A program made the translations under genes and the position numbers. Shown in pieces: positions 10,314 through 54,462 of a stretch of 64,000 nucleotides of DNA; the stretch's first letter is position 1; every line of letters begins with the position of its first letter. The stretch lies in NCBI GenBank assembly GCA_965235115.1, contig OZ249446.1, positions 14,012,001 through 14,076,000 on the forward strand. The letters run 5' to 3'. The notes below the pieces were generated by a model that did no database searches, was not told the DNA's origin, and was given only the letters and a program-made list of their open reading frames with translations. Source of the DNA: Laetmonice hystrix (taxonomy: Eukaryota).

Positions 10314-10365
10314 CCTTCTTGTGAATGGCTCAGCTTGGCATCACGAAATATTTGGAACTCCTTAC
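10314..10365 (-). other. Candidate recursive splice site with a 52-nt cryptic RS exon
   Basis: Minus strand: tattaacatgtacgttacttttgtatgttgcag|GTAAGG (AG/GT junction at 10366/10365). A second donor, aagg|GTAGGA, follows 52 nt later. The RS exon has a TGA in phase 0. Confidence 0.65.
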
Positions 10366-10414
10366 CTGCAACATACAAAAGTAACGTACATGTTAATACA
10401 AGTTATCTTACTAA

Positions 10415-10723
10415 CCCCAGCGTTATTCCTGTCACACCTAAGATCAGCCACCTCTACCCCAGCGTTATTCCTGTCACACCTGAGATCAGCCACCTCTACC
10501 CCAGCGTTATTCCTGTCACACCTGAGATCAGCCACCTCTACCCCAGCGTTATTCCTGTCACACCTGAGATCAGCCACCTCTGCCCCAGCGTTATTTCTGT
10601 CACACCTGAGATCAGCCACCTCTACCCCAGCGTTATTCCTGTCAGACCTAAGATCAGCCACCTCTACCCCAGCGTTATTTCTGTCACACCTGAGATCAGC
10701 CACCTCTGCCCCAGCGTTATTCC
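10415..10723. repeat. Minisatellite, 42-bp unit, ~7 copies
   Basis: ccccagcgttattcctgtcacacctgagatcagccacctcta repeated. It explains ORFs 10285-10776, 10335-10820 and 10362-10703. Confidence 0.95.
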
Positions 10724-12134
10724 CCCAGCCAAAAGCTCTAACAAAGTATTCCTCATTAACGCTATGTTCCTTGTGATTGCCATGGAGCCCTATACTATAT
10801 CCCTAGTAGTCTTGACCTAAGCCATATTACCTAAACGCCTGTTCCCAGAAATAATCATTTCTCATGCAAAGCGACGCTAAGATTTCACCCAGCTTCGCGG
10901 CTTTTCCACTTTGAAGCAATCTTTCACGTTCAAAACAACAAGATAATTTAAGATGATGCCAATATAGATTTCTTTTTGATTCCAACCTCCGCGGACTGGA
11001 CGGTTCGTTCACGCCGGCCTATAGCCCTCTACCGTCCATCTTGATGTCTGATGACCTGAACACCTCCAGAAAACATTGGGTTACCGGTCATAGGTATCTT
11101 CTTTATAACTTATTGTGAAGTGGGGACGACAGGCGACCCCCCCCCCCCCCCCCCAAGTACGGCACTGATTGTACATTTCTGGCTTCCGTCACACCTACGC
11201 ATGTTTAACGACCATGTATACATATATCAAACAAATCCTGCCTTTAGGTGAGTCTCGCATCAAATTGAAGTTAGTATTTTGCTCGTGTTTTGATAGGAAG
11301 TATTTTGTAGAATGTTGTGAAAGTCTGCAGGGATATTTCCCCCCACCCGAGTCGCGTACAGCACTTTCTGTTGTGCAGCCCCACGGTTGGACAACAACAC
11401 TTTATGATAAAACTGTTGACGGAAGGCAGGATGATCGGGTTTATATCACGGCTACATTATATGTCTCGAAAGGAAAGGAACAGTAAATATAGAATTAACT
11501 TAGCTATGGTGTTCTGAAAAAAACGATATGTCTTCAGATAATAGAATAAGTTCTTTGACATTTATTAATAGTTTAGCTTGGAGTGTTCTCATTACTTTAG
11601 ATCGAGCCAAAACTTTGAGGGTGAGAAATGGCAGTTACTAACTTCATTATGATGTTAGCGTCACCTAAAGGCAGGTTTTGATGTGTGTGGATACTCAGGT
11701 TAAGAAATCAACATGAAATAAACGGAACTTGGTTCGCCTAAAATATACAAAGCACGCTATACTAAATACTGTTCGAACCTAACACATGTGTTAACATGAT
11801 CAAAACGACTTCTGTAATACGCATGGGTTTTATACAAGCCTAGGTTTTGAATTGGTGAAGGATGTAAAATCCTTTACATCTCCATCACTACCGGTATATA
11901 TCTATGGAAACATTCGACCACGATATCCTAAAAGAAAACGACTAGAGCTGAGAAAAGGCGCTAGTGTTACCATGTCGGAGACTTGATTCGTGGAGGATGA
12001 GGAGCGGGAAGATTCCAGGAACCGTGGAGGTGGGCCAGACCGCTGACCCAGGACCTCTGCCCCCCATACACACACACACCCAAAGTGACTGAAACCACCT
12101 GGCTCAGCGCGTGCGGCTCCCGCTGCCACACCTG

Positions 12135-12149
12135 GTTCCTAATGGCAAC
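12135..12149. promoter_or_regulatory. RFX X-box-like motif
   Basis: GTTCCTAATGGCAAC, an imperfect match to GTNRCC(N0-3)RGYAAC. Confidence 0.3.
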
Positions 12150-12351
12150 CAGATGGGAGGTAACAGAAGACTAGAGTGTGCACAAGATGAACGATATCTG
12201 CTTTCTCCGGCGACCTTGATTAGCCGCGGTTGATAAAAGATCTGACCGCAAAAGTCAGGGTTGGTTCGTTCTTGGAGGAATAAGGTTCTTCCAACTGGGA
12301 ACGGTTTGGGCATGCTACATGGGTCTCTCCCAGGGTTGGCGTATCGCAATG

Positions 12352-13590
12352 GTGTCTGCAGACACGCTGTCCTGTCAGCCTACTGTCTGTAGACACGCTG
12401 TCCTGTCAGCCTACTGTCTGTAGACACGCTGTCCTGTCAGCCTACTGTCTGTAGACACGCTGTCCTGTCAGCCTACTGTCTGTAGACAGGCTGTCCTGTC
12501 AGCCTACTGTCTGTAGACACGCTGTCCTGTCAGCCTACTGTCTGTAGACACGCTGTCCTGTCAGCCTACTGTCTGTAGACAGGCTGTCCTGTCAGCCTAC
12601 TGTCTGTAGACAGGCTGTTCTGTCAGCCTACTGTCTGTAGACACGCTGTCCTGTCAGCCTACTGTCTGTAGACAGGCTGTCCTGTCAGCCTACTGTCTGT
12701 AGACAGGCTGTCCTGTCAGCCTACTGTCTGTAGACACGCTGTCCTGTCAGCCTACTGTCTGTAGACAGGCTGTCCTGTCAGCCTACTGTCTGTAGACAGG
12801 CTGTTCTGTCAGCCTACTGTCTGTAGACACGCTGTCCTGTCAGCCTACTGTCTGTAGAGACACTATCCTGTCAGCCTACTGTCTGTAGACAGGCTGTTCT
12901 GTCAGCCTACTGCCTGTAGAAACGCTGTCCCGTCGGCCTACTGTCTGTAGACAGGCTGTTCTGTCAGCCTACTGCCTGTAGACAGGCTGTTCTGTCGGCC
13001 TACTGTCTGTAGACAGGCTGTTCTGTAGACATTGTCATGTCAGCTCAGCCTGCTGTCTGTAGACAGGCTGTTCTGTCAGCCTACTGCCTGTAGAAACGCT
13101 GTCCCGTCGGCCTACTGTCTGTAGACAGGCTGTTCTGTAGACACGGGCATGTCAGCTCAGCCTGCTGTCTGTAGACATTGTCATGTCCGCTCAGCCTGCT
13201 GTCTGTAGACAGGCTGTTCTGTCAGCCTGCTGTCTGTGGCTGTTCTGTCAGCCTGCTGTCTGTAGACAGGCTGTTCTGTCAGCCTGCTGTCTGTAGACAT
13301 GCTGTTCTGTCAGCCTCCAGTCAACCTTCTGTCTGTAGACACGCTGCCCTGTCAGCATGCTGTCTGTAGACACGCTGTCCTGTCAGCTCAGCCTACTGTC
13401 TGTAGACACAATGCACAGCTTTCCGACAAAGTGTCCTCGTTGTCCTGTCAGACTGTTGTGTACCGTCCGGTAAGGCTCCTGCCTGCAGACAGGTTGTTCT
13501 GTCAGCTTGCTGTCTGTAGACACACTATCCTGTTAGCCGTCTGTCTGCAGACAGGCTGTTCTGTCAGCCTGTTGTCTGTATCTCAGCATA
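12352..13590. repeat. Minisatellite, 31-bp unit (gtagacacgctgtcctgtcagcctactgtct), decaying towards the right
   Basis: Homogeneous for about 600 bp, then progressively divergent. Confidence 0.95.
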
Positions 13591-14277
13591 CCGCCCGTAC
13601 ATACTAAAATTACTCTCCTTTGACTTTTTCAGATTGACAACCCGCCACTCACACGAAACGGCTAAAACCAGGACATGTATAATTCTTTGCACTGTAATTA
13701 CTTTGCCTATTTTTCCTTACAGCGTTATTTCTTTATTATTCCCTTAATATCGTTTCAGTGTCAATTTCAATTGCTCCCAGCGCATCTCACTTTCCACTTT
13801 CAATTCACAATTCACTCAGCAACTCTTTAGGCCGGAAGTTCTAGCTTCATTTGTTTAGATGTGTGTCCATGGGGATTCTCAAAATGACCTTCTCACGGCC
13901 AAAAGCGAATTTTTTTTACGGCCGTCTTGATTTCGAAACATACTTTACAACAACAATAAGGAAGTAACGTGGGTGTCCCAGCTCCAACGAAGAAATCCAG
14001 ACATCCCTGATTTCAAGGCTGAGTCATGGTAGGGGTGTAAACTCTTTCCATTCGGTATAATTAGGCCCCGGACTATGGAACCTATAGTGCTTCCTTAAAT
14101 TGGTTTTAATACGTCTTCATGGAACTATATTTAGTTTATGTGAAAGTCACGCCCGTCGTGAACTGCAATCATGATTATATCCGGCCTACGCGTCATTTCG
14201 TGTACAAGTTTTGGTTTCTACTTCCACCTGTCCATGTAACTCAGCCGCTGTAACATTAACATGTCACAGCACACTGT

Positions 14278-14390
14278 CTGAAAATCAGCCGCTGTCTCAA
14301 AACCAGCCACTCTCTCAAAACCAACCGCTATATATCAAAACCAGCCGATGTCTATCAAAACCAGCCACTGTCTTTTAAAAGCCAGCCTGA
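14278..14390. repeat. Short degenerate ~20-bp tandem (aaaaccagcc.ctgtct), ~6 copies
   Basis: The aaaaccagcc core recurs in the sequence. Confidence 0.7.
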
Positions 14391-18372: not shown

Positions 18373-18392
18373 GCAGTGCCCCCTGGTGGCCA
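18373..18392 (-). promoter_or_regulatory. CTCF-type motif
   Basis: Minus strand TGGCCACCAGGGGGCACTGC, essentially the bilaterian CTCF consensus. Confidence 0.7.
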
Positions 18393-22469: not shown

Positions 22470-22584
22470 CGTCCGTCAGATGTCAGCGGCAGTGTCATTC
22501 CTGTCATATACCCGCTATGTTTGACATCAAAGGAGACGGGCGCGATGACATGTTGGGCCGTACACCTGGTATTGATGACACAAT

Positions 22585-25500
22585 CAATATAACGGGACGG
22601 AAGGCTGGCCGGGAGCTGGGTCCCAAACCACTCCCACATCTCTACTACATCTCTTACCGTGTCTCTAACAATATACACCATCAATATAACGGGACGGAAG
22701 GCTGGCCGGGAGCTGGGTCCCACACCACTCCCACATCTCTACTACATCTCTTACCGTGTCTCTAACAATATACACCATCAATATAACGGGACGGAAGGCT
22801 GGCCGGGAGCTGGGTCCCACACCACTCCCACATCTCTACTACATCTCTTACCGTGTCTCTAACAATATACACCATCAATATAACGGGACGGAAGGCTGGC
22901 CGGGAGCTGGGTCCCACACCACTCCTACATCTCTACTACATCTCTTACCGTGTCTCTAACAATATACACCATCAATATAACGGGCCGGAAGGCTGGCCGG
23001 GAGCTGGGTCCCACACCACTCCCACATCTCTACTACATCTCTTACCGTGTCTCTTACAATATACACCATCAATATAACGGGCCGGAAGGCTGGCCGGGAG
23101 CTGGGTCCCACACCACTCCCACATCTCTACAACATCTCTTACCGTGTCTCTAACAATATACACCATCAATATAACGGGCCGGAAGGCTGGCCGGGAGCTG
23201 GGTCCCACACCACTCCCACATCTCTACTACATCTCTTACCGTGTCTCTTACAATATACACCATCAATATAACGGGACGGAAGGCTGGCCGGGAGCTGGGT
23301 CCCACACCACTCCCACATCTCTACTACATCTCTTACCGTGTCTCTTACAATATACACCATCAATATAACGGGACGGAAGGCTGGCCGGGAGCTGGGTCCC
23401 ACACCACTCCCACATCTCTACTACATCTCTTACCGTGTCTCTAACAATATACACCATCAATATAACGGGCCGGAAGGCTGGCCGGGAGCTGGGTCCCACA
23501 CCACTCCCACATCTCTACTACATCTCTTACCGTGTCTCTAACAATATACACCATCAATATAACGGGACGGAAGGCTGGCCGGGAGCTGGGTCCCACACCA
23601 CTCCCACATCTCTACTACATCTCTTACCGTGTCTCTAACAGTATACACCATCAATATAACGGGACGGAAGGCTGGCCGGGAGCTGGGCCCCACACCACTC
23701 CCACATCTCTACTACATCTCTTACCGTGTCTCTAACAATATACACCATCAATATAACGGGACGGAAGGCTGGCCGGGAGCTGGATCCCACACCACTCCCA
23801 CATCTCTACAACATCTCTTACCGTGTCTCTAACAATATACACCATCAATATAACGGGACGGAAGGCTGGCCGGGAGCTGGGTCCCACACCACTCCCACAT
23901 CTCTACTACATCTCTTACCGTGTCTCTAACAATATACACCATCAATATAACGGGACGGAAGGCTGGCCGGGAGCTGGGTCCCACACCACTCCCACATCTC
24001 TACTACATCTCTTACCGTGTCTCTAACAATATACACCATCAATATAACGGGACGGAAGGCTGGCCGGGAGCTGGGTCCCACACCACTCCCACATCTCTAC
24101 TACATCTCTTACCGTGTCTCTAACAATATACACCATCAATATAACGGGACGGAAGGCTGGCCGGGAGCTGGGTCCCACACCACTCCCACATCTCTACTAC
24201 ATCTCTTACCGTGTCTCTAACAATATACACCATCAATATAACGGGACGGAAGGCTGGCCGGGAGCTGGGTCCCACACCACTCCCACATCTCTACTACATC
24301 TCTTACCGTGTCTCTAACAATATACACCATCAATATAACGGGACGGAAGGCTGGCCGGGAGCTGGGTCCCACACCACTCCCACATCTCTACAACATCTCT
24401 TACCGTGTCTCTAACAATATACACCATCAATATAACGGGACGGAAGGCTGGCCGGGAGCTGGGTCCCACACCACTCCCACATCTCTACTACATCTCTTAC
24501 CGTGTCTCTAACAATATACACAATCAATATAACGGGACGGAAGGCTGGCCGGGAGCTGGGTCCCACACCACTCCCACATCTCTACTACATCTCTTACCGT
24601 GTCTCTAACAATATACACCATCGATATAACGGGACGGAAGGCTGGCCGGGAGCTGGGTCCCACACCACTCCCACATCTCTACAACATCTCTTACCGTGTC
24701 TCTAACAATATACACCATCAATATAACGGGACGGAAGGCTGGCCGGGAGCTGGGTCCCACACCACTCCCACATCTCTACTACATCTCTTACCGTGTCTCT
24801 AACAGTATACACCATCAATATAACGGGACGGAAGGCTGGCCGGGAGCTGGGTCCCACACCACTCCCACATCTCTACTACATCTCTTACCGTGTCTCTAAC
24901 AATATACACCATCAATATAACGGGACGGAAGGCTGGCCGGGAGCTGGGTCCCACACCACTCCCACATCTCTACTACATCTCTTACCGTGTCTCTAACAAT
25001 ATACACCATCAATATAACGGGACGGAAGGCTGGCCGGGAGCTGGGTCCCACACCACTCCCACATCTCTACTACATCTCTTACCGTGTCTCTAACAATATA
25101 CACCATCAATATAACGGGACGGAAGGCTGGCCGGGAGCTGGGTCCCACACCACTCCCACATCTCTACTACATCTCTTACCGTGTCTCTAACAATATACAC
25201 CATCAATATAACGGGACGGAAGGCTGGCCGGGAGCTGGGTCCCACACCACTCCCACATCTCTACTACATCTCTTACCGTGTCTCTAACAATATACACCAT
25301 CAATATAACGGGACGGAAGGCTGGCCGGGAGCTGGGTCCCACACCACTCCCACATCTCTACTACATCTCTTACCGAGTCTCTAACAATATACACCATCAA
25401 TATAACGGGACGGAAGGCTGGCCGGGAGCTGGGTCCCACACCACTCCCACATCTCTACTACATCTCTTACCGTGTCTCTAACAATATACACCATCAATAT

Positions 25501-26462
25501 AACGGGACGGAAGGCTGGCCGGGAGCTGGGTCCCACACCACTCCCACATCTCTACTACATCTCTTACCGTGTCTCTAACAATATACACCATCAATATAAC
25601 GGGCCGGAAGGCTGGCCGGGAGCTGGGTCCCACACCACTCCCACATCTCTACTACATCTCTTACCGTGTCTCTAACAATATACACCATCAATATAACGGG
25701 ACGGAAGGCTGGCCGGGAGCTGGGTCCCACACCACTCCCACATCTCTACAACATCTCTTACCGTGTCTCTAACAATATACACCATCAATATAACGGGACG
25801 GAAGGCTGGCCGGGAGCTGGGTCCCACACCACTCCCACATCTCTACAACATCTCTTACCGTGTCTCTAACAATATACACCATCAATATAACGGGACGGAA
25901 GGCTGGCCGGGAGCTGGGTCCCACACCACTCCCACATCTCTACTACATCTCTTATCGTGTCTCTAACAATATACACCATCAATATAACGGGCCGGAAGGC
26001 TGGCCGGGAGCTGGGTCCCACACCACTCCCACATCTCTACTACATCTCTTACCGTGTCTCTAACAATATACACCATCAATATAACGGGACAGAAGGCTGG
26101 CCGGGAGCTGGGTCCCACACCACTCCCACATCTCTACTACATCTCTTACCGTGTCTCTAACAATATACACCATCAATATAACGGGACGGAAGGCTGGCCG
26201 GGAGCTGGGTCCCACACCACTCCCACATCTCTACAACATCTCTTACCGTGTCTCTAACAATATATACCATCAATATAACGGGACGGAAGGCTGGCCGGGA
26301 GCTGGGTCCCACACCACTCCCACATCTCTACAACATCTCTTACCGTGTCTCTAACAATATATACCATCAATATAACGGGACGGAAGGCTGGCCGGGAGCT
26401 GGGTCCCACACCACTCCCACATCTCTACTATATTTCTCATATCGTGTTTCTAACAATATACA
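22585..26462. repeat. Satellite/minisatellite, 97-bp unit, 40 copies, highly homogeneous
   Basis: The unit caatataacgggacggaaggctggccgggagctgggtcccacaccactcccacatctctactacatctcttaccgtgtctctaacaatatacaccat repeats head-to-tail with only point variants. The ORF track repeats every 97 bp. Confidence 0.98.
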
Positions 26463-30678: not shown

Positions 30679-32850
30679 AGTTAGGGATCGACTAATCTAT
30701 AGGGCGAATTCTGTACAAAGCATTGATTGGGGGCTTTGTATGCAGGGAATTTCACCAGAGGGACCTTCTGAAGGAGAAATGGACATGATGTACCATGGCA
30801 GTCTATCGCTGGTTTCATCCGACGTTTTACAAGGTGTGACGTTCTGTTGCGACTGTAAGTAAAACTGTCAGTGCCCAGTAAACGGTTCGGCTCACAGGGC
30901 AGGGTGCGTCTATGGCGGCTGGCTTCTTACTACACACTTCAAACACGACACCTGGTGTTCATCAAAGGAATTAATCGTCTATTCGATAAATATTCTACCT
31001 CACCGTTTCCTAATTCTTCCCGGACGTCACCCGCTACATAAATCCCCCCGCCCCTGAAAGTTCTGATTTAGTGTAAATATAGTTTTTGTGACGCCTATCG
31101 TGCGAGTGGAAACTGATGGACGTAGCAGGTTGGCGGATAGACTCTCTCCAAACACAAGTGTTCACATCCTGCACAAAAGAAAACACGGTACCTCCCGATA
31201 ACTCACGCTCTCCGCCTCTCCTATTCTCAATGAAAACACCCGGCCACCGGTCCGGACACCGGGCCACGTTTGGACCCTCGATTGTGTTTTCTCACTCTGG
31301 TTCTGGCCCTCCATCCCCGTATTGTTGGGAAGTTTACTTTTTTTGCAACTCGACAATTCCGGATTACGAAATTGCTTTTTGTTGCAGCTTCATCAGTGGC
31401 AAGAACATTGTCGTTGGAACTCTCTCCATTCCAATTTGGGATCTCCAATTTCATTTCGGTCCTCACTCTCCAGAGCATACAGGACCTATAGCATAGATCC
31501 TCTATTCCTCGGCTATATAACACATTATGCCCTGAATATTACGGTCCCAATACGGTATAATACGGTCCCAAATGGAATCCTATAGGCCTACTGTAGTTTA
31601 AATCCAGTGGCTATCAATATGATATATTATGTAGGTCTATACGCCTATAGAGGACGATAGATCCATTGCTAAACGACACGCAAGCGAGGACAGTGCTCCC
31701 TTCATCCCCATGTCTTTGGCTAGGTAACCCGCTGTCTCCCAGTGGCAAGAAACAACCCTTCAGCCCATCTTCAATCGCTGGTCCCGCCCAAGATGCCTGC
31801 CCCGAACAAACACATCTGGGGGCCCTGAGATATGGCTCGGACGGCTCCTTTGGCCCTTTTCGTCCTGTGCTTATAACCCACGAGAATCATCCATCTCTTC
31901 ACTGAGAATAAGCAAGGCAGGAAAGGGCAAGGTTTTTGTTGGTATTGTATGGAATGAGTGTAGCCTGGTAAATGAGGCAAGCCTTCTCTCTGCTCCAGGA
32001 CTCAGCTCTCTGGAAGACATCGTATTCATTTGCCGTCGATGTCTTCTGACACAGAATCAGCCAAACGTGAAAATAGTGAAACACAGGCTGCCACACTCAC
32101 CGTCATCTGTACCTGTTACAACATGAGGCGCTGCTCGGAATACATCGGAACACGTTGGTACTGATCGTGCCTCAGGTCACCAATCACAGAAAGGGAAAAA
32201 CACAGGCAGAACCTCTTCTATGAATTAATCTTTCTCTCAACTCTCTTCTTGCAAAGTCACTGCAATAATTCTTAGGTTTTGTTGCCCCCAACTGGAAACG
32301 GGTTCAACATCAAAAGATCACATCCGAATGATAACAAATCGACTCACACTCCGGATCCACGAATGGTTTTCACAATCACTAAATCAACTGTAAATTAACA
32401 TTAGCCAATCCTATCTCAACTCAAAGATATTAATCTAACGCATTTTATTTAGGCAGGCGGGAGAGGTAAGTGCCTCCACTTGCCCCCCCCCCCCCCTCCC
32501 GCTGTAATGACCCCCATAGCCTATTGGAGACTTGCCTACACGAACGAACGAACGAACGAACGGACACTGACGGGAAATAGAAAGCTTTTGATGCTAACGT
32601 TTTTGCTGGCGAGTTTTCTCATATCTCATCCAGGAGGGAAAACTATCGAGAAAGAGAAAGATTATCTTATACATGAATTATCTCTTGGGAGGATCGAAGA
32701 CGAAGAAATACCGTCACGTGGGAGTGACGGTCACCACAGTGTCAGTGCTTGTCATTCACAATACTTAAAGTTATGTCAAATGACTGCCTCGCCCTTACCT
32801 TGTGACTTCCCAATCTGATGGGCGATACTGATAATAATCACTCCACTCAC

Positions 32851-32898
32851 CCTGACGACCGATTCAAAACGGTTTTAGACTTCAGTACTGCAACTTAC
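32851..32898 (-). other. Candidate recursive splice site with a 48-nt cryptic RS exon
   Basis: Minus strand: gtggtgttgtatttgtatgttacag|GTAAGT (junction 32899/32898). A second strong donor, cagg|GTGAGT, follows 48 nt later. The RS exon has a TAA in phase 0. Confidence 0.7.
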
Positions 32899-33120
32899 CT
32901 GTAACATACAAATACAACACCACTGAGGATGGGGCCGGATTCATCAATGTTACTTATCAATACAATATGAGAATTGTACGGAAGCAATGCTTTCAAATGG
33001 TATTAATAGTTACCAAAGGTGAAGATCTTGACATATCAATACTAAAACCTCAGTATTCTCACGACCAACACATGATATGCATGTATGAAGACCGAAAAAT
33101 CCTGCCACCACAGGGGCAGA

Positions 33121-36229: not shown

Positions 36230-36346
36230 ACATTTCCTTCCCTCAGTCGGAGTATAACTAAGAATCGAAACGAACGCACGATGTACGCTTCTATCGACAC
36301 TCCGACTCTGCCCACCTCTGGATGATTCAACAAACCACGGGATATA

Positions 36347-38385
36347 GGGACAAACTGACACAATCGGCATACAAATCCCACAACAGCCAACATATACCCG
36401 CCTTCACCTGTCAAATAGGGACAAACTGGCACAATCGGCATACAAATCCCTCAACAGACAACGTATACCCGCCTTCACCTGTCAAACAGGGACAAACTGG
36501 CACAATCGGCATACAAATCCCTCAACAGCCAACGTATACCCGCCTTCACCTGTCAAACAGGGACAAACTGGCACAATCGGCATACAAATCCCTCAACAGA
36601 CAACGTATACCCGCCTTCACCTGTCAAATAGGGACAAACTGACACAATCGGCATACAAATCCCTCAACAGACAACGTATACCCGCCTTCACCTGTCAAAC
36701 AGGGACAAACTGGCACAATCGGCATACAAATCCCTCAACAGACAACGTATACCCGCCTTCACCTGTCAAACAGGGACAAACTGGCACAATCGGCATACAA
36801 ATCCCTCAACAGACAACGTATACCCGCCTTCACCTGTCAAACAGGGACAAACTGGTACAATCGGCATACAAATCCCTCAACAGCCAACGTATACCCGCCT
36901 TCACCTGTCAAACAGGGACAAACTGGCACAATCGGCATACAAATCCCTCAACAGACAACGTATACCCGCCTTCACCTGTCAAACAGGGACAAACTGACAC
37001 AATCGGCATACAAATCCCTCAACAGACAACGTATACCCGCCTTCACCTGTCAAAACAGGGACAAACTGACACAATCGGCATGCAAATCCCTCAACAGACA
37101 ACGTATACCCGCCTTCACCTGTCAAACAGGGACACACTGGCACAATCGGCATGCAAATCCCTCAACAGCCAACGTATACCCGCCTTCACCTGTCAAACAG
37201 GGACACACTGGCACAATCGGCATGCAAATCCCTCAACAGCCAACGTATACCCGCCTTCACCTGTCAAACAGGGACAAACTGGCACAATCGGCATGCAAAT
37301 CCCTCAACAGCCAACGTATACCCGCCTTCACCTGTCAAGACAAACTGGTACAATCGGCATACAAATCCCTCAACAGACAACGTATACCCGCCTTCACCTG
37401 TCAAACAGGGACAAACTGGTACAATCGGCATACAAATCCCTCAACAGACAACGTATACCCGCCTTCACCTGTCAAACAGGGACAAACTGACACAATCGGC
37501 ATACAAATCCCTCAACAGACAACGTATACCCGCCTTCACCTGTCAAACAGGGACAAACTGACACAATCGGCATACAAATCCCTCAACAGACAACGTATAC
37601 CCGCCTTCACCTGTCAAACAGGGACAAACTTGCACAATCGGCATACAAATCCCTCAACAGACAACGTATACCCGCCTTCACCTGTCAAATAGGGACAAAC
37701 TGACACAATCGGCATACAAATCCCTCAACAGCCAACGTACATACCCGCCTTCACCTGTCAAATAGGGACAAACTGACACAATCGGCATACAAATCCCTCA
37801 ACAGCCAACGTATACCCGCCTTCACCTGTCAAATAGGGACAAACTGACACAATCGGCATACAAATCCCTCAACAGCCAACGTATACCCGCCTTCACCTGT
37901 CAAATAGGGACAAACTGACACAATCGGCATACAAATCCCTCAACAGACAACGTATACCCGCCTTCACCTGTCAAATAGGGACAAACTGACACAATCGGCA
38001 TACAAATCCCTCAACAGCCAACGTATACCGCCTTCACCTGTCAAATAGGGACAAACTGACACAATCGGCATACAAATCCCTCAACAGCCAACGTATACCC
38101 GCCTTCACCTGTCAAATAGGGACAAACTGACACAATCGGCATACAAATCCCTCAACAGCTAACGTATACCCGCCTTCACCTGTCAAATAGGGACAAACTG
38201 ACACAATCGGCATACAAATCCCTCAACAGACAACGTATACCCGCCTTCACCTGTCAAATAGGGACAAACTGACACAAACGGCATACAAATCCCTCAACAG
38301 ACAACGTATACCCGCCTTCACCTGTGTAATAGGGACAAACTGGCACAATCGGTATACAAATCCCTCAACAGACAACGTATACCCC
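36347..38385. repeat. Minisatellite, 71-bp unit, ~29 copies
   Basis: ggacaaactggcacaatcggcatacaaatccctcaacagacaacgtatacccgccttcacctgtcaaacag repeated, period 71. Confidence 0.97.
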
Positions 38386-40110: not shown

Positions 40111-40416
40111 CACCGATGTCCGCTGTTTGTTGTGTGTGGGAGGGAATCTGAAGGTGCTCCGTGATCAACATACGGGCTGGGGAGGGGGGGGGGGGGTTCT
40201 AGTCTGCAACACTGGCCCTGGCTTCGCCGACTGTCTACTTAGATACTCCCTAGAACTATCTATATAGGCTTGTTGTCTCTATGCAGACACTGTCTGGGTC
40301 GGTGGTCCTAATCTGTTCATTCAACTAGTGTCCAGGGCATTGTTCCTTACTGGTGTATTCAGATACTGAACAGTGTTTGCTGTCTGACACAACATCCGCA
40401 TTGAACTAACCACCTA

Positions 40417-41143
40417 GAGTTCCCAACACCAGCCTTGAGTTCCCAACACCAGCCTTGAGTTCCCAACACCACCCTTGAGTTCCCAATACCAGCCTTGAGC
40501 TCCTAACACCAGCCTTGAGTTCCCAACACCAGCCTTGAGATCCCAACACCAGCCTTGAGTTCCAAACACCAGCCTTGAGTTCCCAACACCAGCCTTGAGT
40601 TCCCAACACCAGCCTTGAGTTCCCAACACCAGCCTTGAGTTCCAAACACCAGCCTTGAGTTCCCAACACCAGCCTTGAGTTCACAACACCAGCCTTGAGC
40701 TCCCAACACCAGCCTTGAGTTCCCAACACCAGCCTTGAATTCCCAAAACCAGCCTTGAGTTCCCAACACCAGCCTTGAGTTCCCAACACCAGCCCTGAGT
40801 TCCCAACACCAGCCTTGAATTCCCAACACCAGCCTTGAGTTCCCAACACCAGCCTTGAGTTCCCAACACCAACCTTGAGTTCCCAACACCAGCCTTGAAT
40901 TCCCAAAACCAGCCTTGAGTTCCCAACACCAGCCTTGAGTTCCCAACACCAGCCTTGAGTTCCCAACACCAGCCTTGAGTTCCCAACACCAGCCTTGAGT
41001 TCCCAACACCAGCCTTGAGTTCCCAACACCATCTTTGAGTTTGCAACACCAGCCTTGAGTTCCCAACACCTGCCTTGAGTTCCCAACACCAGCCTTGAGT
41101 TCCCAACACCAGCCTTGAGTTCCCAACACCTGCCTTGAATCCC
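40417..41143. repeat. Minisatellite, 20-bp unit (gagttcccaacaccagcctt), ~36 copies
   Basis: Directly visible. It explains four overlapping minus-strand ORFs. Confidence 0.97.
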
Positions 41144-41339
41144 CATTATGACGCTCTACCCCCAGTTCGAGTTTCATACAGTCTAGCCTGTGTTACCCCC
41201 AACCCCCATCCCCTCTACCACGGGCACCCCACCCAAACCCCAGACCGCTGTAACACACTGCCCCCATCAAACCTACCCCGGGGCCAACCGTGCAGAAAGA
41301 TCCGGTCCTCAACACTCCAACCCGGGAAGTCGAGGTCTT

Positions 41340-41600: not shown

Positions 41601-42954
41601 GGTCCCCCACGGGTTGGGTTGACCGCCCAGGTTGGCGTTGTGAACCGCGCGAAAGTGTCCCCTGGCCACCGCCCGATCTCCTTGCATATACTGCCTTGTG
41701 TCCGACTTAGAACACAACACAGCTTTCCCTCAGTTACGCCATTGGCTTAGACTGTGCTGACACCTAGCCGCCGAGCAAGGAAACACCGCCGCCGTCACTT
41801 GGCAATCGTCATCGAGTCGTGAATCCCTCCGGAAACCAATCGAACCGATTCAAATAACGTTCATCTACTTCGGCTCTCAGGCATCTCTGCCCCGACTCGT
41901 AACTTAAGGACCCTGAGAAGTGGGAAAAGATTCACACTACCCGCAGTTCCAATCAAAGGTAAAACGTGGGTTAAATAATGAATTTACGATGAAGAGTAAC
42001 CGAATACCTCAGTGTACCTTCCAGGTGCCCTCACACGTCCGAAAGGGTTTAACCCGTTTGAGGTTAACGTTTGGCTTGCAGGCCGTCACCTGTCGTGTCT
42101 GTATCCAACTCTTTTCCAGCCGGTATAATAACGACTAGATGTGGCCAACTGTCCACGCCGAGAATCCCTGATTTCTGTGAAAACTTAATGTAAATCGATG
42201 ACGGCCACAGAGAGCAGACATGTTAGTCTGCTGTGGACTTTTACCTGTCGTGTTGGAGACACCTGTGACCAAACCTGGCGCCTCGTGTAAGGAACTGAAC
42301 CTGGTATGTATAGTGAACGACGTCATCACCTTACTGCTTACTACACTCGATGGCCTTAGGCTTAGAGCTAATTGACACAACGATCTAAACTCAGCCAACT
42401 TAAGCCAAGGACTTATTGACCTTATCGCCAAGAACTTCTCAAGTCATACCTCTGACTTTAAACCTTACAACCCCTAGAGCAATGAACATCTCAAATTATA
42501 GGACCTATTGGAATTAGATTAGAGTAATAGATGTCTTACGTCATAGTCTGCCACTTGATGTCCTTGCTGTCAAGGGAAGTGATGACCTTTACGAGCGACG
42601 GCTTTGTGACCTTAGTGTTAAAGGACGCGGTGACCTTAAGACTAAAGATCTGATGACTTCAGTGTCTCCGATACCATGGCCCTAACCTTAGAACCAACGT
42701 CATACCAAGACTCTAAGATCTCATTGTCTAGAATTTTTAGTTTATATAGAATATATCCGTCTGCACATGCTGGCCTCAAGCTGAAACTATCCAGGAACAA
42801 GTGCTCAAAGTGTCCGACTGACACAACACTTTCTCTATCTCCACGAGACTTCATTCTAGATTAGTCTGCAAATAATCAGTTTCCAGTTAATGTCGTTCTT
42901 ACTGATGATTGTCTAACTGGTATCTGCACCAGAACCGGCGCCTACAAAAAAACT

Positions 42955-44088
42955 GTGATGACCTGGGAACCAGCGGCAAGAACCCCGACGGCCTTGGAAC
43001 CAGCAGCAAGAACTGCATTGGCCATGGAACCAGCGGTAAGAACTGCATTGGCCTTGGAACCAGCAGCAATAACTGCATTGGCTTTGGAACCAGCAGCAAT
43101 AACTGCATTGGCCTTGGAACCAGCAGCAAGAATTGCATTGGCTATGGAACCATCAGCAATAACTGCATTGGCCTTGGAACCAGCAGCAATAACTGCATTG
43201 GCCATGGAACCAGCGGGAAGAGCTGTGATGGCCTTGGAACCATCAGCAAGAACTGCATTGGCCTTGGAACCAGCAGCAATAACTGCATTGGCCATGGAAC
43301 CAGCGGGAAGAGCTGTGATGGCCTTGGAACCAGCAGCAATAACTGCATTGGCCTTGGAACCAGCAGCAATAGCTGCATTGGCCTTGGAACCAGCAGCAAT
43401 AACTGCATTGGCCTTGGAACCAGCAGCAATACCTGCATTGGCCTTGGAACCAGCAGCAATAACTGCATTGGCCTTTGAACCAGCAGCAAGAATTGCATTG
43501 GCTATGGAACCATCAGCAATAACTGCATTGGCCTTGGAACCAGCAGCAATAACTGCATTGGCCATGGAACCAGCAGCAATAACTGCATTGGCCTTGGAAC
43601 CAGCAGCAAGAACTGTGATGGCCTTGAAATCAGCGGCAATTACTCTGTTGGCCTTGGAACCCGCGGCAAGAACTGCATTGGTCTTGGAACCAGCAGCAAT
43701 AACTGCATTGGTCTTGGAACCAGCAGCAAGAACTGCATTGGTCTTGGAACCAGCAGCAATAACTGCATTGGCCATGGAACCAGCGGCAAGAACTGTATTG
43801 GCCAGTGGTAAGAACTGTGTTGGCTTTGGAACCAGTGGTAAGAACTGTGTTGGCTTTGGAACCAATGACAGGAACCCCGACGGCCTTGGCACCAGCGGCA
43901 AGAACTGCATTGGCCTTGGAACCAGCGGTAAGAACTGCATTGGCCTTGAAACCAGCGGCAAGAACCCCGATAGCCTTGGAACCAGCGGCAAGAACTGCAT
44001 TGGCATTGGAACCAGCGGTAAGAACTGCATTGGCCTTGGAACCTGCGGCAAGAACCCCGATAGCCTTGGAACCAGCCGCCAGAACTGA
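42955..44088. repeat. 30-bp tandem array (ggccttggaaccagcagcaataactgcatt), ~37 units, with long ORFs on both strands
   Basis: The unit is stop-free in most frames (ALEPAAITAL, GLGTSSNNCI, antisense NAVIAAGSKA). There is an 8-bp deletion near 43803. Confidence 0.95.
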
Positions 44089-49475: not shown

Positions 49476-51766
49476 CTACAACCCCCACCCCACTCCCCAA
49501 ATCCTCCCTTACCGCCATAACAAGGCTCCAGGCCGAACTCCGTTAAAAAAAAACAACATTTAATCACTAGACTCAAAGTACATCACGCCTAGCAAAGGGA
49601 CGGCACTAATTGAATACGCCCCCGTCTGAGACTGAACAAGTTGATAAAAAGACGTACAATAATAACATCAGCGAAACCTCTGCGCCATACTGTTCGGGGA
49701 GATTATCATTGCCTGCTGAGGGATGATCATAAAGAAGATTACCCCCACCCGTGCAACACCCGCACCTCTCAAAACTCCCAAAATCAACATTTGCTAACAC
49801 TGGGGCTGATCATCTGTCTCTCCGACCAAATCCCGGGACTTAAGTCTGAGCCGACAATCTGTGCCCAACCCGGACAGTCTGGCTGCCCCCCCCCCCCCCC
49901 CAACTCCACGGCTGAATTAGCCGGGCCTCCCAGTACCATCCATTAATGGCACTGTACCACTGAACTAGCTTAGTCAACTCTTGTTACTCTACATAACAGA
50001 CGGCCCCGCCGAGCAGGTGGTTGTACATGTATATAATGTCTGACTCACCGGCGTGCGATGACTGGTCGTCACAATCAAGTCTACACCAAGTACTATAGGC
50101 CTCAGCAGGCACTGCAGAATTACGTCCACACTAGGACTAATTAGCATCAACACTGAACAGCGACGGCAGTCTCAAACCTACAGCAGAAACTACTAGCCTC
50201 AACAACATGGACAACAGAATCAGATCTACACCAAGTCTACATAAGGAGTCAAGGGCCTGAACATTCAAGTCCAAAAGTTCAAGTTTCGAGAAATGGACAT
50301 AAACAAGTTGTCTCTACAGTGCAGTTGGATGGGCATGCTTCCTTCTGTCATGTGACTGATAGCTTTATAGAAGGATGTTTAGCAGAAATACACCCATTGA
50401 TAGATAGGACTTACCTCCCTGAATCCAAATTTACACTTAAGTCGATTTTGATGAAAGTTGAACTTGCTTCCTTTTGTCATTTCACGGCAGAGTAGAGGTA
50501 AAATAACAATGTACAGTCGTTAGGAATGACGGGTTCGAACCCAGATTAGGCCCTTGTCAGGAATGACGGACCCGAACAATGATACGGAATTAAGTATAAC
50601 CCAGGAATGACGGGCGTCAACTATGACGGACGTCAACTATGACGGGTGTCAACTATGACTATGACGGCGGACCAGACTATCCGCTGTCATAACGCCAACA
50701 CTAGAACCCGCAATGATTCTACCCACCACTAATCCACACGGTGCCAGCGCTGCGATATACGCGGATCAGTCTCCTTAATTAGTCTTCTGGGGAGGTTCTA
50801 TTTATACACGGAACAAAGATTTACCCTCAGATTTGTCGGATTCTGTTTTCTTTAGGGGTGCGATAACTGAACACGGACGCACTCTGTTTTACTAACGGCA
50901 AAATGCAAATCCTCCGAAACAATAAATCCGATAATAATTGTAGATTTTTCAAAATTCAAGGTTACAAAAAAGGAGTCGTTTGTGCTCTTGAGTTCTCTAT
51001 TTCCGACTTAAGCAGCATGCACTTTTATTGATTGGAGTCTTCAACCATTATGCCAAAGAGGCTGAATTGACTGTGCTTCTGTTAATTCCTATACTCTGCC
51101 AAGTAACATGGCAAATTCACATTGTCGACGCTCCAGTACCGTTTGTCCGGACCATCTTTTAAGCTCCCTGCTGTCTGCCACTAACTGGTCACTAACTATG
51201 GCCAGTGACAACTCCCTACGGGCCAGCCAACCAGCAATCAGCCTGGTAGTCGGTGCAGAACCAGTCATCAGGCCCCACGAGGGGACCAATCACCAAATAG
51301 ACCTGTCTTTACTGCACGATCTGAGCGCTGGCAACATTTCCCTTTGTCCAATCTGCTCATCTGAATTATGTGTACTGGAAGGAGCTAGGATCGGTTATTT
51401 CCTTTCACGCTAAGTACGGCGCCGCTCAGACGTGGCTTCCTGTCTCCGGTTCTATACACCTGTACTTTACTGGTCTTCAGATTTCCTGATACACCAAGGA
51501 AAGAACCACCGGGAAGACGCCAGCGAAACGTATCAGAAACTTCCTCGTCCAAGTCGCGCTAGAATGGAAGAGGGTCGGGTAGCTTTATAAGTCATCCTAA
51601 ATTCAATATGCAGCTGAAATATTCCGCCAGCAGTGGGATTTACGGTTCTTAGCTCGGCCGCAATACGAAGCTTCACTTATCGGACTTAAGACGTGTCCTT
51701 AAGAACCGGACCCAATCGCCACAGTTGGATTGGACGGTCAGTAAGATAGGGAAAGATTCTTGATTC

Positions 51767-52318
51767 TTGAATGGTGATAAAAGTCCGAAACTGCTGCCAT
51801 ATGTAGGGAGCAGCCAGTATCTCTGGCATACAAGAGCCATAGGAAAAGTCTCGACATCTATAAAAGAAGTTTGTTCAGAACAATCTCAGCTCCCCATCCA
51901 GCTATCTGAGTATGGCTTCCTTATACACAATATCGGTGGTCCGACCCATGGATCGTCCCCACATGGCCATGGCTCGGATATGGCCATTTGGACCAAATCT
52001 ATCCCGGTAAACATTGCCCATACCACCGCCTTCACCCCACAAGGTAAACACACCATCCCCACCCCACTCAACCAACATTACACGGCAGTTGGATTTCTAA
52101 GTCAATACACTTGGGTGTATCATTGCTACAGAAGAAAAGATTTCAACTCCTCTCCCCAAAACGGTATTCACATACAGACCCGGCCCCAATGTGCCCTGAA
52201 TAACCCAACCTCTCCTCTGAGCACCACAATCAATCTATGTACCGATGTATCGGCCCGACCCACCGACGTCTGGCCGCGCTGGACCCACACTGAGCTACGG
52301 TTCACATTTATACCGTAA
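51767..52318 (+). mobile_element. Decayed LINE ORF2 fragment (APE endonuclease C-terminus plus linker)
   Basis: The 183-aa ORF carries, in LINE order, LNGD (~I.GDFN), LIHNIGGPTH (~L.N.G.PT), YHCYRRKDF (~Y.KADF) and WPRWTHTEL (~PWW..EL). The motifs are degenerate. Confidence 0.45.
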
Positions 52319-53509
52319 TTAGAGAACTGTTAGCCGTCATCTTACACCTGGACACCTCAGGTGTGTTAATCTGGGAGGAAAACACCAATTCAAACCATGT
52401 AACCTCCCACTCAGCAGAGGATCCTGAGGCTAACCCAACTCTCCCTATACTACTGACACGTCCCCACACGGGTCAGGACGTGTCAAGGTCTGTCCAGGCA
52501 CTAACCCTTCAACAAACCACATTAACTAATAAATGTGGAAATAAAACGACGTTTTCTCCCTTCTCCGTTTATCATTTCATCATATAATAATAATTTCAAG
52601 TCTTAACGATACCTTGAGGGGAGACAGCGACATCTCACTGGATGGTCGAGACATTCCAATTCAATCCAACCATAAAATAAACATAACCTTGGTTGTCAGG
52701 ACTCAGCCCTGGGGAGTGCAGGGAATAGGGTGAGTGGGCCCCCGTCAAAGTATGAAATGTTGCGGGGTCAGTGAGAACAGTCCTCTCAACGACTGGGACC
52801 AACCTGTGAACGGGTGACTTGAACACCTTCTGACAGCCTCAAATTGAGTTATGTCAACGAGTGTTACAACAGCCAAGCCTCAACGAACAGGTTCTTTAGG
52901 CTTTGATCCTTGCAGTGACGCGAGGCCTAGGATAGCTTCCGACTGCCTCCAGTTGGGGGCTACAGTATGGTCACAGCCTATCGCAGTCCTAAGGGTCTCT
53001 CTAAACATAGTGGTTCAGTTTCTCTAGAGGATAATAGGTCGAGATACGAACAGAGACATAGTTCACTGGAGTTACAAACTGAATGCAGCAAGTTACTGCG
53101 AGAAATTCATGATAATGAAGTGATTATTTTCTCCAGTAGAGAAACTGACTGGTGTTAACACTGGTGGCCTGACACTGAGGAGAAAGTACCAGTACCATTT
53201 CTCTCAGCTCCCCTGGTATATTGATGAGTGTGGTCGGCGGTGACTTGTGAAGGCCCTGTACACGGGGACAATGTGAGCCACCATACCATTGCCATCATAC
53301 CAAGCCATTTTTCATGAGTTAAATTCCGACCATGACCTGCGAATAATCGTCGGTCAGTGTCCTCCACACACAGCAGGCCTCCGTTTCTACCCATCCCTTG
53401 TTCAACTCGTCCCCACTACCTCACAACCCATGGCCATATCTTTATTGTGTCCAACGACAAGCAGCGATGGATTGCACCCGTCCTTGCTCTGCTAATCCGC
53501 GCGTCTGAC

Positions 53510-54120
53510 AGATGATCCGTTAATCCCACCATAATGGGATGGGCCACGATTGTCTGCGCGCCCATGTAAAGATGCTATCTCCCCAGTGGCCACTCTGGGC
53601 GGGCTCCCATCTCACCATCAATCTCCTACAGTGTGCCTTCTCCATTCGTTCATATCAATCACTCAGCGTGGGAATATCTCCCCCCTCCTTCCCACCTCCC
53701 ATGAATAATTCAATTTTCTCTGTCTCAGGAAACAATATCTCCGGCCAACATGTCCACTCGTGGCCTGAGGAGAGGGGACATCGGAAACAATACTTACCTC
53801 TTATAACCAGCCGCCCCATATTACCTCCCATACATCGACACCCAGGCCTCGACCAGCTGGGCCTCTATAATATCCCACCAGACCCGGCCTCTACTACACC
53901 TCGGTCCACTTGGACGATCAACTTTACCTTCGACTTCCAAACACCTTGACGGCCTGGAGATTGTGGACCCGGTGAACGGAATCATATTACATGTCGAGTG
54001 GTGGCAGGTCACTGCCTGCCCAACACCCAGGAGACTCGGCCGACAATGGGGGCAGTAACCTCCACCACCCGTCTTCACTAGGACTTCTCACCCACCATAA
54101 CTTCATCTGGCTCCGTCCGG
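53510..54120 (+). mobile_element. Possible highly decayed DIRS/Ngaro-type retrotransposon RNase H/MT region
   Basis: Across frames: MGWA (~GWGA), QWPLWAGSHLTINLLQ (~W..E..HINLLE), PYIDTQAS (~IDLFAS), PDP and IILHVEWW (~ILVAPWWP). The order and spacing are roughly DIRS-like, but the matches are weak. Confidence 0.3.
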
Positions 54121-54462
54121 ACAACAAACCGGCAGCGAGAAAAGTTTCTGTCTGTGTGGGTCAAGCGAATAGACGGGAGGGATGGAGGGGGGAGGGGTCA
54201 ACGGCCCACTCTTACCACTCCCTGCGGTCCGGCGAGCAATTCGTACAGGACGCTGCTACTTGGAGCTATTGGTCATGGTAACAATTCTGATGGGAAAATT
54301 ATATCGTGACATATACCTACGATACATACAGATCAATAAAAGTAAAACAAACAAAAATCTTCCAACTCAAGTTTCTACCTCGGAATTATGTAGGCGTGTA
54401 GGCCAGGGGATATGTAGGTACCATGTGGTAAACTGACATGATACAGATGTATGTATCCTTAC

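What the first reader, a model, noticed from the sequence alone, without database searches (positions are those of the whole stretch)
10314..54462. Recursive-splicing architecture: two evenly spaced ratchet points with ~50-nt cryptic RS exons in a >54-kb intron
Seen: downstream of the exon donor at 54462 there are two AG|GT zero-length-exon junctions on the gene's strand. They are TTTGTATGTTACAG|GTAAGT (32899/32898) and TTTGTATGTTGCAG|GTAAGG (10366/10365), identical at 18 of 19 nt with unrelated flanks. They cut the intron into 21.6-kb and 22.5-kb segments. Each has a second donor close downstream (GTGAGT at +48, GTAGGA at +52), and each cryptic exon has a phase-0 stop. Established: Drosophila ratchet points (e.g. 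in Ubx) and vertebrate RS sites in long neuronal genes have this 3'SS-5'SS juxtaposition plus a short cryptic exon. Inference: this invertebrate gene removes its giant intron stepwise. As far as I know the mechanism is little documented outside flies, nematodes and vertebrates.
Basis: partly seen in the sequence, partly recalled or inferred. Interest (0 to 1): 0.85.

Follow-up and report, generated by a model that had tools for sequence, protein, structure and literature searches.

The report
Predicted recursive splice sites, RBMS/shep intron
Two "acceptor fused to donor" sites sit in a 73-kb intron of this invertebrate's RBMS/shep RNA-binding-protein gene; they belong to a strand-specific series of five such sites that look like the ratchet points flies use to remove long introns in steps, but no RNA intermediate has been seen.

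Summary
TTTGTATGTT[A/G]CAG|GTAAG lies on the minus strand at 32899/32898 and 10366/10365. This 17-mer occurs nowhere else in the 627-Mb genome.

The host gene is an RBMS1-3 / Drosophila shep orthologue. An RNA-like run shows the exon at 54463-54651 spliced to an exon 33.8 kb upstream, on the minus strand. The intron holding the two sites is probably 73.2 kb. It seems to end at an in-frame 42-nt exon that itself begins with AG|GTAAGT.

The two sites are the weakest of five sense-strand TTNCAG|GTAAG sites in 118 kb of this gene's 5' introns. About 0.16 are expected from the genome-wide density, and none lies on the antisense strand in 204 kb. All five have TT at -5/-6 and a second donor, strong to weak, 37-52 nt downstream.

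In a related species, whose introns are otherwise unalignable, the orthologous intron has three strong sense-strand sites of the same kind. It also has an RS-type in-frame exon at a similar distance.

Best reading: fly-type ratchet points with cryptic RS-exons (confidence 0.6). No junction, sawtooth or lariat evidence could be obtained.

This scan has already reported the same architecture in other long introns of this genome (ephrin, Eph, KDM3 and others). It is a new member of a known kind.

The parts
54463..54651 (-). Coding exon B (189 nt, phase 0 at both ends) of the RBMS/shep-like gene. Its donor CAG|gtaagg at 54462 opens the long intron.
   Evidence: One search gives the sequence. In one search, a contig of the RNA-like run X4 covers 54503-54652 and continues into an exon found at G000:C12:14100418. 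One search shows an open frame with the upstream ATG exon. One search found a 63%-identical exon in a relative.
32899..32925 (-). Site 1 acceptor half: T/G-rich tract ending ...ttgtatgttacag, with TT at -5/-6.
   Evidence: heuristic 3'ss score 3.4; 12 of 20 pyrimidines.
32851..32898 (-). Site 1 cryptic RS-exon (48 nt). It begins with the regenerated donor GTAAGT (32898-32893) and has a TAA stop in phase 0.
   Evidence: ratchet-point donor score 8.7.
32845..32850 (-). Site 1 RS-exon donor, AGG|GTGAGT at +48.
   Evidence: score 6.1, weaker than the ratchet-point donor.
32793..32798 (-). A further strong donor, AAG|GTAAGG, at +100 from site 1 (alternative end of the cryptic exon).
   Evidence: score 7.3.
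10388..10397 (-). ATTAACATGT block at -32..-23 of site 2. It contains a branch-point-like TTAAC. The relative's site at 42,066 nt has the same block in the same register.
   Evidence: best of 20 cross-species site pairs, z = 2.3; suggestive only.
10366..10387 (-). Site 2 acceptor half: ...acgttacttttgtatgttgcag, with TT at -5/-6.
   Evidence: 3'ss score 4.7; 13 of 20 pyrimidines.
10314..10365 (-). Site 2 cryptic RS-exon (52 nt). It begins with the donor GTAAGG and has a TGA stop in phase 0.
   Evidence: ratchet-point donor score 7.5.
10308..10313 (-). Site 2 candidate RS-exon donor, AGG|GTAGGA at +52 (weak).
   Evidence: below 3 on the heuristic donor score.
10414..10723 (.). 42-bp x 7.4 minisatellite just upstream (sense strand) of site 2. 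The shared 19-mer lies outside it.
   Evidence: also visible in the alignment.

Best explanation
The two sites are fly-type intronic ratchet points with short cryptic recursive-splicing (RS) exons. They lie in a roughly 73-kb phase-0 intron of an RBMS1-3 / shep orthologue transcribed on the minus strand.

Proposed mechanism (inferred, not shown):
1. As the intron is transcribed, the donor of exon B (54462) is spliced to the acceptor at 32899. The 48-nt cryptic exon, bounded by GTGAGT, helps the spliceosome recognise this acceptor.
2. That splice recreates a strong donor, CAG|GTAAGT. This donor outcompetes the weaker downstream donor and is spliced to the acceptor at 10366.
3. The step repeats, ending at an in-frame 42-nt exon 18.7 kb beyond the window start. 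That exon itself begins with AG|GTAAGT.

The intron would so be removed in pieces of 21.6, 22.5 and 29.1 kb. If a cryptic exon were included, its phase-0 stop would truncate the reading frame.

The two sites belong to a set of five sense-strand TTNCAG|GTAAG sites in the gene's 5' introns. In window coordinates these are at 99259, 79332, 32898, 10365 and -18737.
For: Shown:
- The sequence is as described.
- The gene is an RBMS orthologue: RRM_1 by Pfam, and PDB RBMS1 6m75 at E = 3e-36.
- Transcription is on the minus strand and exon A is spliced to exon B. A contig of the RNA-like run X4 joins them with exact GT-AG borders.
- The frame is open and in phase 0 through exons A, B and the mini-exon.
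- The sites are not a repeat: the 17-mer is unique to these two places in 627 Mb.
- Strand-specific excess: TTNCAGGTAAG occurs 5 times on the sense strand and 0 times on the antisense strand in 204 kb. The genome-wide density of 1.37 per Mb of strand predicts 0.16 in the 118 kb; first-order Markov simulations give 0.2.
- On a heuristic combined 3'ss+5'ss score, the five sites score 8.6-15.0. The next sense-strand site scores 4.7 and the best antisense site 2.4.
- All five have TT at -5/-6, as do 99.5% of fly ratchet points (10.1101/006163). All five have a second donor 37-52 nt downstream (weak GTAGGA at two of them), like the ~50-nt fly cryptic RS-exons (PMC8605326).
- Each ratchet-point donor is stronger than its RS-exon donor.
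- Segment sizes of 9-29 kb fall within the fly range (mean 18 kb, 10.1101/006163).
- In a relative (exon B 63% identical; introns unalignable), the orthologous intron has three outlier sense-strand sites at 17.9, 29.1 and 42.1 kb. They score 10.7-20.4 against a best antisense score of 2.2. An in-frame RS-type exon lies at 75.9 kb.
- Site 2 and the relative's 42.1-kb site share a 10-nt branch-point-like block in register.
- Drosophila shep carries a tested cryptic RS-exon (PMC8605326).
Against: - No RNA evidence exists for use of either site. X4 contigs stop at 54503, before the donor, so the partner of the 54462 donor was not seen.
- X4 holds none of the sampled words of 32780-32960.
- The two reported sites are the weakest of the five. 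Their tracts are T/G-rich, with only 12-13 of 20 pyrimidines, and the downstream donor of site 2 is poor.
- The genome-wide excess of the motif over its reversed control is modest (1.5-fold).
- The 3' end of the intron (the mini-exon) is inferred from frame and composition, not from RNA.
- Orthology of individual sites between the two species is not demonstrable; the best pair has z = 2.3.
- The splice-site scores use a generic PWM recalled from human frequencies, not one trained on this species.
Confidence: 0.6

Rival explanations
1. The sites are ordinary regulated cassette or poison exons (48/100 nt and 52 nt). They would be included in a fraction of mRNAs to trigger nonsense-mediated decay, for example as autoregulation of this RNA-binding protein. 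On this view the GTAAG at their 5' ends has no re-splicing role.
For: Both units have an acceptor, a downstream donor and an in-phase stop. Site 1 has two good downstream donors, at +48 and +100. RNA-binding-protein genes often carry poison exons (general knowledge; poison exons are discussed in PMC8605326).
Against: Five of five units in this gene begin exactly with GTAAG, and three of three strong ones in the relative begin with GTRAGT. An ordinary cassette exon has no reason to start this way. X4 contigs hold no words of the site-1 unit (weak evidence). The two readings also overlap: an RS-exon that is sometimes included is a poison exon.
Confidence: 0.15
2. The two sites are non-functional. 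They would be a chance AG|GTAAG pair, or the relic of an old local duplication, that happens to lie in a gene whose three stronger sites are the real elements.
For: CAGGTAAG alone is expected about once per 65 kb per strand. The two sites score lowest of the five. TATGTTNYAGGTRAG is not enriched genome-wide (47 against 55 for the control), so the shared extra bases are not a general element. No RNA support.
Against: Given two CAGGTAAG sites, 10 of 11 identical upstream bases has a probability of about 1e-5. The 17-mer occurs nowhere else in the genome. Flanks are fully diverged, so a neutral relic would not have kept a 19-nt island. Both sites are on the sense strand, both have TT at -5/-6 and a donor about 50 nt downstream, and they split the intron fairly evenly (P = 0.04). 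The relative's orthologous intron has sites at comparable distances.
Confidence: 0.2

Closest known systems
Drosophila intronic ratchet points with cryptic RS-exons (Ubx, kuz, Bx, luna and notably shep; Duff et al. 2015 preprint 10.1101/006163; Joseph & Lai 2021, PMC8605326)
   Same: Juxtaposed acceptor and donor with the core TTNCAG|GTAAGT. On the sense strand of introns tens of kb long. A cryptic exon of about 50 nt, closed by a weaker donor and carrying stops. Several sites per intron, with segments of about 10-30 kb. The host gene is the orthologue of shep, which has a tested fly RS-exon.
   Different: No RNA proof here. The pyrimidine tracts of the two reported sites are interrupted by G and A and are weaker than the fly consensus. 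One regenerated donor is GTAAGG rather than GTAAGT. The animal is not an insect. The fly and present sites cannot be shown to be orthologous.
Vertebrate RS-exons in long neuronal genes (Sibley et al. 2015, as summarised in PMC8605326)
   Same: Exon-definition logic: an RS-exon with its own donor, and a premature stop if it is included.
   Different: Vertebrates have few fully suppressed intronic sites and show no sense/antisense enrichment of the motif (PMC2773006, ratios 0.9-1.5). The local sense-only excess here resembles the invertebrate pattern.
Computational RP-site enrichment in large introns of non-fly invertebrates (Shepard et al. 2009, PMC2773006: sea urchin 8.2x, beetle 8x, bee 4x, mosquito)
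   Same: The same kind of evidence (sense-versus-complement excess of combined acceptor-donor motifs in introns over 50 kb) and the same inference.
   Different: That work is genome-wide statistics without individual loci. Here one gene is dissected and compared with a relative's orthologous intron.
Other predicted ratchet-point ladders in this same genome (scan notes s1-310938 ephrin, s1-313658 Eph, s1-317202 KDM3)
   Same: Same site architecture, the same genome, and the same lack of RNA data.
   Different: Different genes. Those notes are unchecked AI reports and were not re-tested here.

Membership tests
Fly-type intronic ratchet point / cryptic RS-exon | Acceptor and donor juxtaposed (YAG|GTRAGT) on the transcribed strand | tested here: met
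   CAG|GTAAGT at 32899/32898 and CAG|GTAAGG at 10366/10365, on the minus strand. Minus-strand transcription is shown by the spliced contig of run X4.
Fly-type intronic ratchet point / cryptic RS-exon | TT at -5/-6 and a prominent pyrimidine tract (99.5% of fly ratchet points have the TT; 10.1101/006163) | tested here: inconclusive
   TT at -5/-6 is present at both sites and at all five sites in the gene. The tracts of the two reported sites are only 12-13 of 20 pyrimidines, with heuristic 3'ss scores of 3.4 and 4.7 against 7.0 for exon B's real acceptor.
Fly-type intronic ratchet point / cryptic RS-exon | Located inside a long intron (tens of kb) of an expressed gene | tested here: met
   Exon B is expressed and spliced. 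No homologous coding exon lies between 54462 and the in-frame mini-exon at window coordinate -18737. Intron length is 73,199 nt. The 3' end is inferred, not RNA-verified.
Fly-type intronic ratchet point / cryptic RS-exon | Short cryptic exon (~50 nt) closed by a downstream donor that is weaker than the regenerated donor (PMC8605326) | tested here: met
   Site 1: GTGAGT at +48 scores 6.1 against 8.7 for the regenerated donor. Site 2: GTAGGA at +52 scores below 3 against 7.5. The PWM is heuristic, and the donor of site 2 is poor.
Fly-type intronic ratchet point / cryptic RS-exon | Sense-strand excess over the complementary strand (PMC2773006) | tested here: met
   5 sense against 0 antisense TTNCAGGTAAG in 204 kb, with 0.16-0.2 expected. 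The five sites are clear score outliers.
Fly-type intronic ratchet point / cryptic RS-exon | Exon-to-ratchet-point junction reads, sawtooth intronic coverage, or recursive lariats | not testable with these tools
   Only one RNA-like run (X4, contigs only) was found. Its contig ends before the 54462 donor and it holds no words of site 1.
Fly-type intronic ratchet point / cryptic RS-exon | Evolutionary conservation of the site while its flanks diverge | tested here: inconclusive
   The relative's orthologous intron has three strong sense-strand sites and an RS-type in-frame exon at similar distances. Only site 2 shows a possible one-to-one match: a 10-nt in-register block with z = 2.3.
Ordinary cassette / poison exon | Exon present in mature mRNA isoforms | tested here: inconclusive
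   The RNA-like run X4 holds none of the 13 sampled words of 32780-32960. This is one low-depth run, so absence is weak evidence.
Dispersed repeat / transposon fragment | Many copies genome-wide on both strands | tested here: not met
   The 17-mer has exactly two genomic hits, both in this intron on the same strand. The flanks do not align.

The most novel reading that the evidence does not exclude
Stepwise (recursive) removal of the long 5' introns of shep/RBMS is an old bilaterian feature, kept in flies and in this distant, non-insect invertebrate lineage. It would be kept by turnover of ratchet points rather than by conserving their sequence. An expressed in-frame RS-exon would serve as the fixed last step. 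If so, recursive splicing would be ancestral and widespread in invertebrates with long introns, not a fly speciality.
Probability: 0.3. Interest if true: 0.7.

Novelty: new member of a known kind. Interest (0 to 1): 0.5.

Why it matters
Recursive splicing has been shown experimentally only in Drosophila and vertebrates. The open-access library searched here holds no report of it for annelids or molluscs. The only hint outside insects and vertebrates is a motif-enrichment study in sea urchin (PMC2773006).

This locus gives precise targets for testing how widespread the mechanism is and how ratchet points evolve. It has five candidate sites in the orthologue of a fly gene with a tested cryptic RS-exon, and counterparts in a second species. 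The evidence points to turnover of sites at roughly preserved spacing.

The practical value is in annotation. Such sites explain strong "orphan" splice signals in giant introns, and they warn gene predictors against calling the cryptic exons.

Tried and rejected
- **Dispersed repeat:** rejected. The 17-mer is unique to the two sites.
- **Part of the neighbouring minisatellite:** rejected. The array 10414-10723 ends before the shared 19-mer.
- **Shared TATGTT as a genome-wide cis-element:** no enrichment (47 against 55 for the reversed control). The 19-nt identity beyond the splice consensus remains unexplained; common descent or chance within T-rich tracts are both possible.
- **Nested genes in the intron:** the large ORFs (for example 42942-44088 and 40406-41146) are read-throughs of tandem repeats, with no convincing Pfam family.
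- **RNA test:** The second run search showed that X4 lacks site-1 words. Neither tests recursion.
- **Cross-species alignment:** blastn of the two introns finds only exon B. In-register identity of site flanks is 0.18-0.41, with no clear orthologue for site 1. Site 1 and the relative's 29.1-kb site both have a GG|GTGAGTG donor at +48, but their flanks do not align.
- **Walking the relative's contig:** the walk stopped 82 kb downstream because no further called gene was available. The RRM exons of the relative were not reached.
- **The relative's second contig:** it is a 94-97% identical haplotype, too close to be informative.
- **Literature:** the RBMS3 plus recursive splicing search gave one unrelated paper.
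Full report
**1. Observation**

Reading the minus strand confirms the sites. The sequence ...tttgtatgttacag|GTAAGT has its AG ending at 32899 and its GT starting at 32898. The sequence ...tttgtatgttgcag|GTAAGG lies at 10366/10365. The exon donor CAG|gtaagg is at 54462.

The two sites agree at 18 of 19 positions. Their flanks do not align.

The 17-mer TGTATGTTRCAGGTAAG has two hits in the window against 0.05 expected, even allowing two mismatches. In the whole 627-Mb assembly it has only these two hits, both on the minus strand, with zero hits for the reversed control. So it is not a dispersed repeat.

Site 2 lies next to a 42-bp minisatellite (10414-10723), but the shared motif is outside that array.

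Site 1 has GTGAGT at +48, and site 2 has a weak GTAGGA at +52. Site 1 also has AAG|GTAAGG at +100.

**2. The gene**

Minus-strand open stretches downstream of the window encode RRM exons. Pfam finds RRM_1 at 5.8e-17. The best solved-structure match is human RBMS1 (6m75, E = 3.4e-36). The gene is therefore an RBMS1-3 orthologue; by general knowledge, not tested here, RBMS1-3 is the family of Drosophila shep.

Four runs from one sample hold the exon. Three are genomic. The fourth, X4, has 58 million letters and covers only the exon plus a high-copy repeat, so it behaves as RNA, although it is not on record as RNA.

An X4 contig covers 54503-54652 and then continues into 60 letters that map uniquely to G000:C12:14100418, which is window coordinate 88418. 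There an exon ends ...CCAGTG|gtaagt and contains an ATG preceded by in-frame stops.

This shows three things:
- The locus is transcribed on the minus strand.
- The exon at 54463-54651 is an internal, phase-0/0, 189-nt coding exon.
- A 33.8-kb intron precedes it.

The contig stops 40 nt short of the 54462 donor, so the partner of that donor was not observed.

The next exon is inferred. At window coordinate -18737 (G000:C12:13993263) a strong acceptor (…tttttttcttccag) is followed by 42 in-frame nt encoding VSPSYYGYSQDNWM, and then by |gtaagt. An earlier scan note, s1-319924, pointed to this exon. The peptide repeats the SYYGYSQ motif found in the ATG exon. The following exon, which begins the RRM1 region, also starts in phase 0.

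The intron holding the two sites is therefore most likely 73,199 nt. It would be cut into pieces of 21,564, 22,533 and 29,102 nt. Two random cuts would give a split this even with P = 0.037, which is suggestive only.

**3. The two sites are part of a larger, strand-specific set**

A scan covered 204 kb around the gene. It used a heuristic combined score: a generic acceptor tract plus -4/-3, and donor positions +3 to +6, with frequencies recalled from human sites.

| Window coordinate | Combined score |
|---|---|
| -18737 | 15.0 |
| 99259 | 12.7 |
| 79332 | 11.9 |
| 10365 | 8.7 |
| 32898 | 8.6 |

The next sense-strand site scores 4.7, and the best antisense site scores 2.4.

The plain pattern TTNCAGGTAAG finds exactly these five sites on the sense strand and none on the antisense strand. 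Genome-wide the pattern occurs 1,713 times against 1,138 for its reversed control. That is 1.37 per Mb of strand, so 0.16 are expected in the 118 kb spanned by the five sites. First-order Markov simulations give 0.2.

With a stricter tract, Y6NCAGGTAAGT occurs 190 times genome-wide against 74 for the control, inflated by one tandem array. Two of those hits are in this gene.

All five sites have TT at -5/-6. All five have a further donor 37-52 nt downstream; at two of them (79332 and 10365) it is a weak GTAGGA. In each case the regenerated donor scores higher than that downstream donor.

The unit at 79332 lies in the 33.8-kb upstream intron and is open in phase 0 for 51 nt. The units at 32898 and 10365 carry phase-0 stops, and so does the one at 99259 when read in phase 0.

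**4. Comparison with a relative**

A full-library phmmer search with exon B found two ORF fragments that are 63% identical. They lie on two long contigs of ENA assembly ERZ25767047. The two contigs are 94-97% identical haplotypes.

I walked one contig 82 kb downstream of the orthologous donor by looking up called ORFs. The introns of the two species are saturated, and blastn aligns only the exon.

The same score nevertheless picks out three sense-strand outliers in the relative, against a best antisense score of 2.2:

| Distance from donor (nt) | Score |
|---|---|
| 17,895 | 20.4 |
| 29,099 | 10.7 |
| 42,066 | 15.1 |

A weak site lies at 46,458 nt. At 75,890 nt there is an AG|GTAAGT-initiated, 51-nt, in-frame, stop-free unit closed by GTAAGC. 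This matches the position of this genome's 42-nt exon at 73,199 nt.

Site 2 here (44,097 nt from the donor) and the relative's 42,066-nt site share ATTAACATGT at exactly -32..-23. This block contains a branch-point-like TTAAC. The pair is the best of 20 cross-species pairs, but only at z = 2.3.

Site 1 has no demonstrable orthologue. It shares a +48 GG|GTGAGTG donor with the 29,099-nt site, but nothing else aligns.

The architecture is therefore conserved. Conservation of the individual sites is not shown.

**5. What is known**

Fly ratchet points:
- They are juxtaposed acceptor-donor sites in long introns, with TT at -5/-6 in 196 of 197 cases.
- The segments they remove range from 2.6 to 63.6 kb, with a mean of 18 kb (10.1101/006163).
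- They are recognised through cryptic exons of about 50 nt.
- A stronger regenerated donor causes the cryptic exon to be skipped.
- shep is among the tested cryptic RS-exon reporters (PMC8605326).

Combined-site enrichment on the sense strand of introns over 50 kb was reported for sea urchin (8.2x), beetle, bee, mosquito and fly, but not for vertebrates (PMC2773006).

The open library holds no paper linking recursive splicing with annelids or molluscs.

This scan's own notes report the same architecture in ephrin, Eph, KDM3, srGAP, TCF and NCX introns of this genome, all without RNA proof. One of those notes guesses the animal is an annelid. I did not test that.

**6. Verdict**

The recursive-splicing reading is the best explanation. 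It is supported by motif detail, strand specificity, local density, cryptic-exon anatomy and a parallel in a second species.

It remains a prediction. No junction, sawtooth or lariat evidence exists, the two reported sites are the weakest of the five, and the 3' end of the intron is inferred. Confidence is 0.6.

It is a new member of a known kind, and the scan has already met it elsewhere in this genome.

The 19-nt identity of the two sites goes beyond what the splice consensus requires. It is not a genome-wide element and remains unexplained.

Noticed in passing
L010:5332 (G000:C12:14091332, window coordinate 79332), minus strand: A strong RP-type site, ...tgtgttttctgtttcag|GTAAGT, lies in the 33.8-kb intron upstream of exon B. 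The unit is open in phase 0 for 51 nt and has donors at +18, +36 and +51. It could be an expressed in-frame RS micro-exon.
   Followed up: partly
L013 (G000:C12:14111259, window coordinate 99259), minus strand: Another strong site, ...ttattgtctttttcag|GTAAGT, with CAG|GTAAGC at +37. It lies 10.7 kb upstream of the ATG exon, which implies a further 5'UTR intron and a promoter still farther upstream.
   Followed up: partly
L004:1221-1262 minus (G000:C12:13993222-13993263): A 42-nt in-frame exon (VSPSYYGYSQDNWM) begins with AG|GTAAGT. It repeats the SYYGYSQ motif of the ATG exon (L011, about 1500-1628 minus). Its inclusion in mRNA has not been verified.
   Followed up: partly
If it is a promoter or exon of the same gene, some transcripts would bypass both reported sites.
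   Followed up: no
window 2648-56862: The intron is packed with minisatellites: 23 TRF rows. Examples are 97 bp x 40 at 22578-26462, 71 bp x 29 at 36346-38384, and 30 bp x 38 at 42962-44087. These arrays create the long spurious ORFs on both strands.
   Followed up: yes
window 57054-57500: A high-copy repeat: word depth is 1,500-3,900 in the genomic runs against about 40 nearby. It is also present in the RNA-like run X4.
   Followed up: no
window 54705-54935: A low-depth X4 contig (depth 2.3, against 14.7 on the exon) lies in the intron just upstream of exon B. It could be unspliced pre-mRNA or an unannotated exon.
   Followed up: no
window 32780-32960: The three genomic runs hold only 0.54 of the sampled words here, against 1.00 at exon B. 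This suggests heterozygous variants near site 1. Whether the core motif is affected could not be checked.
   Followed up: no
L012 (window coordinates about 92757-93445), plus strand: A tandem array repeats ...cacctgtag|GTAAGTAC on the antisense strand. This shows that repeats can multiply AG|GTAAGT motifs, but these copies lack a pyrimidine tract and score low.
   Followed up: partly
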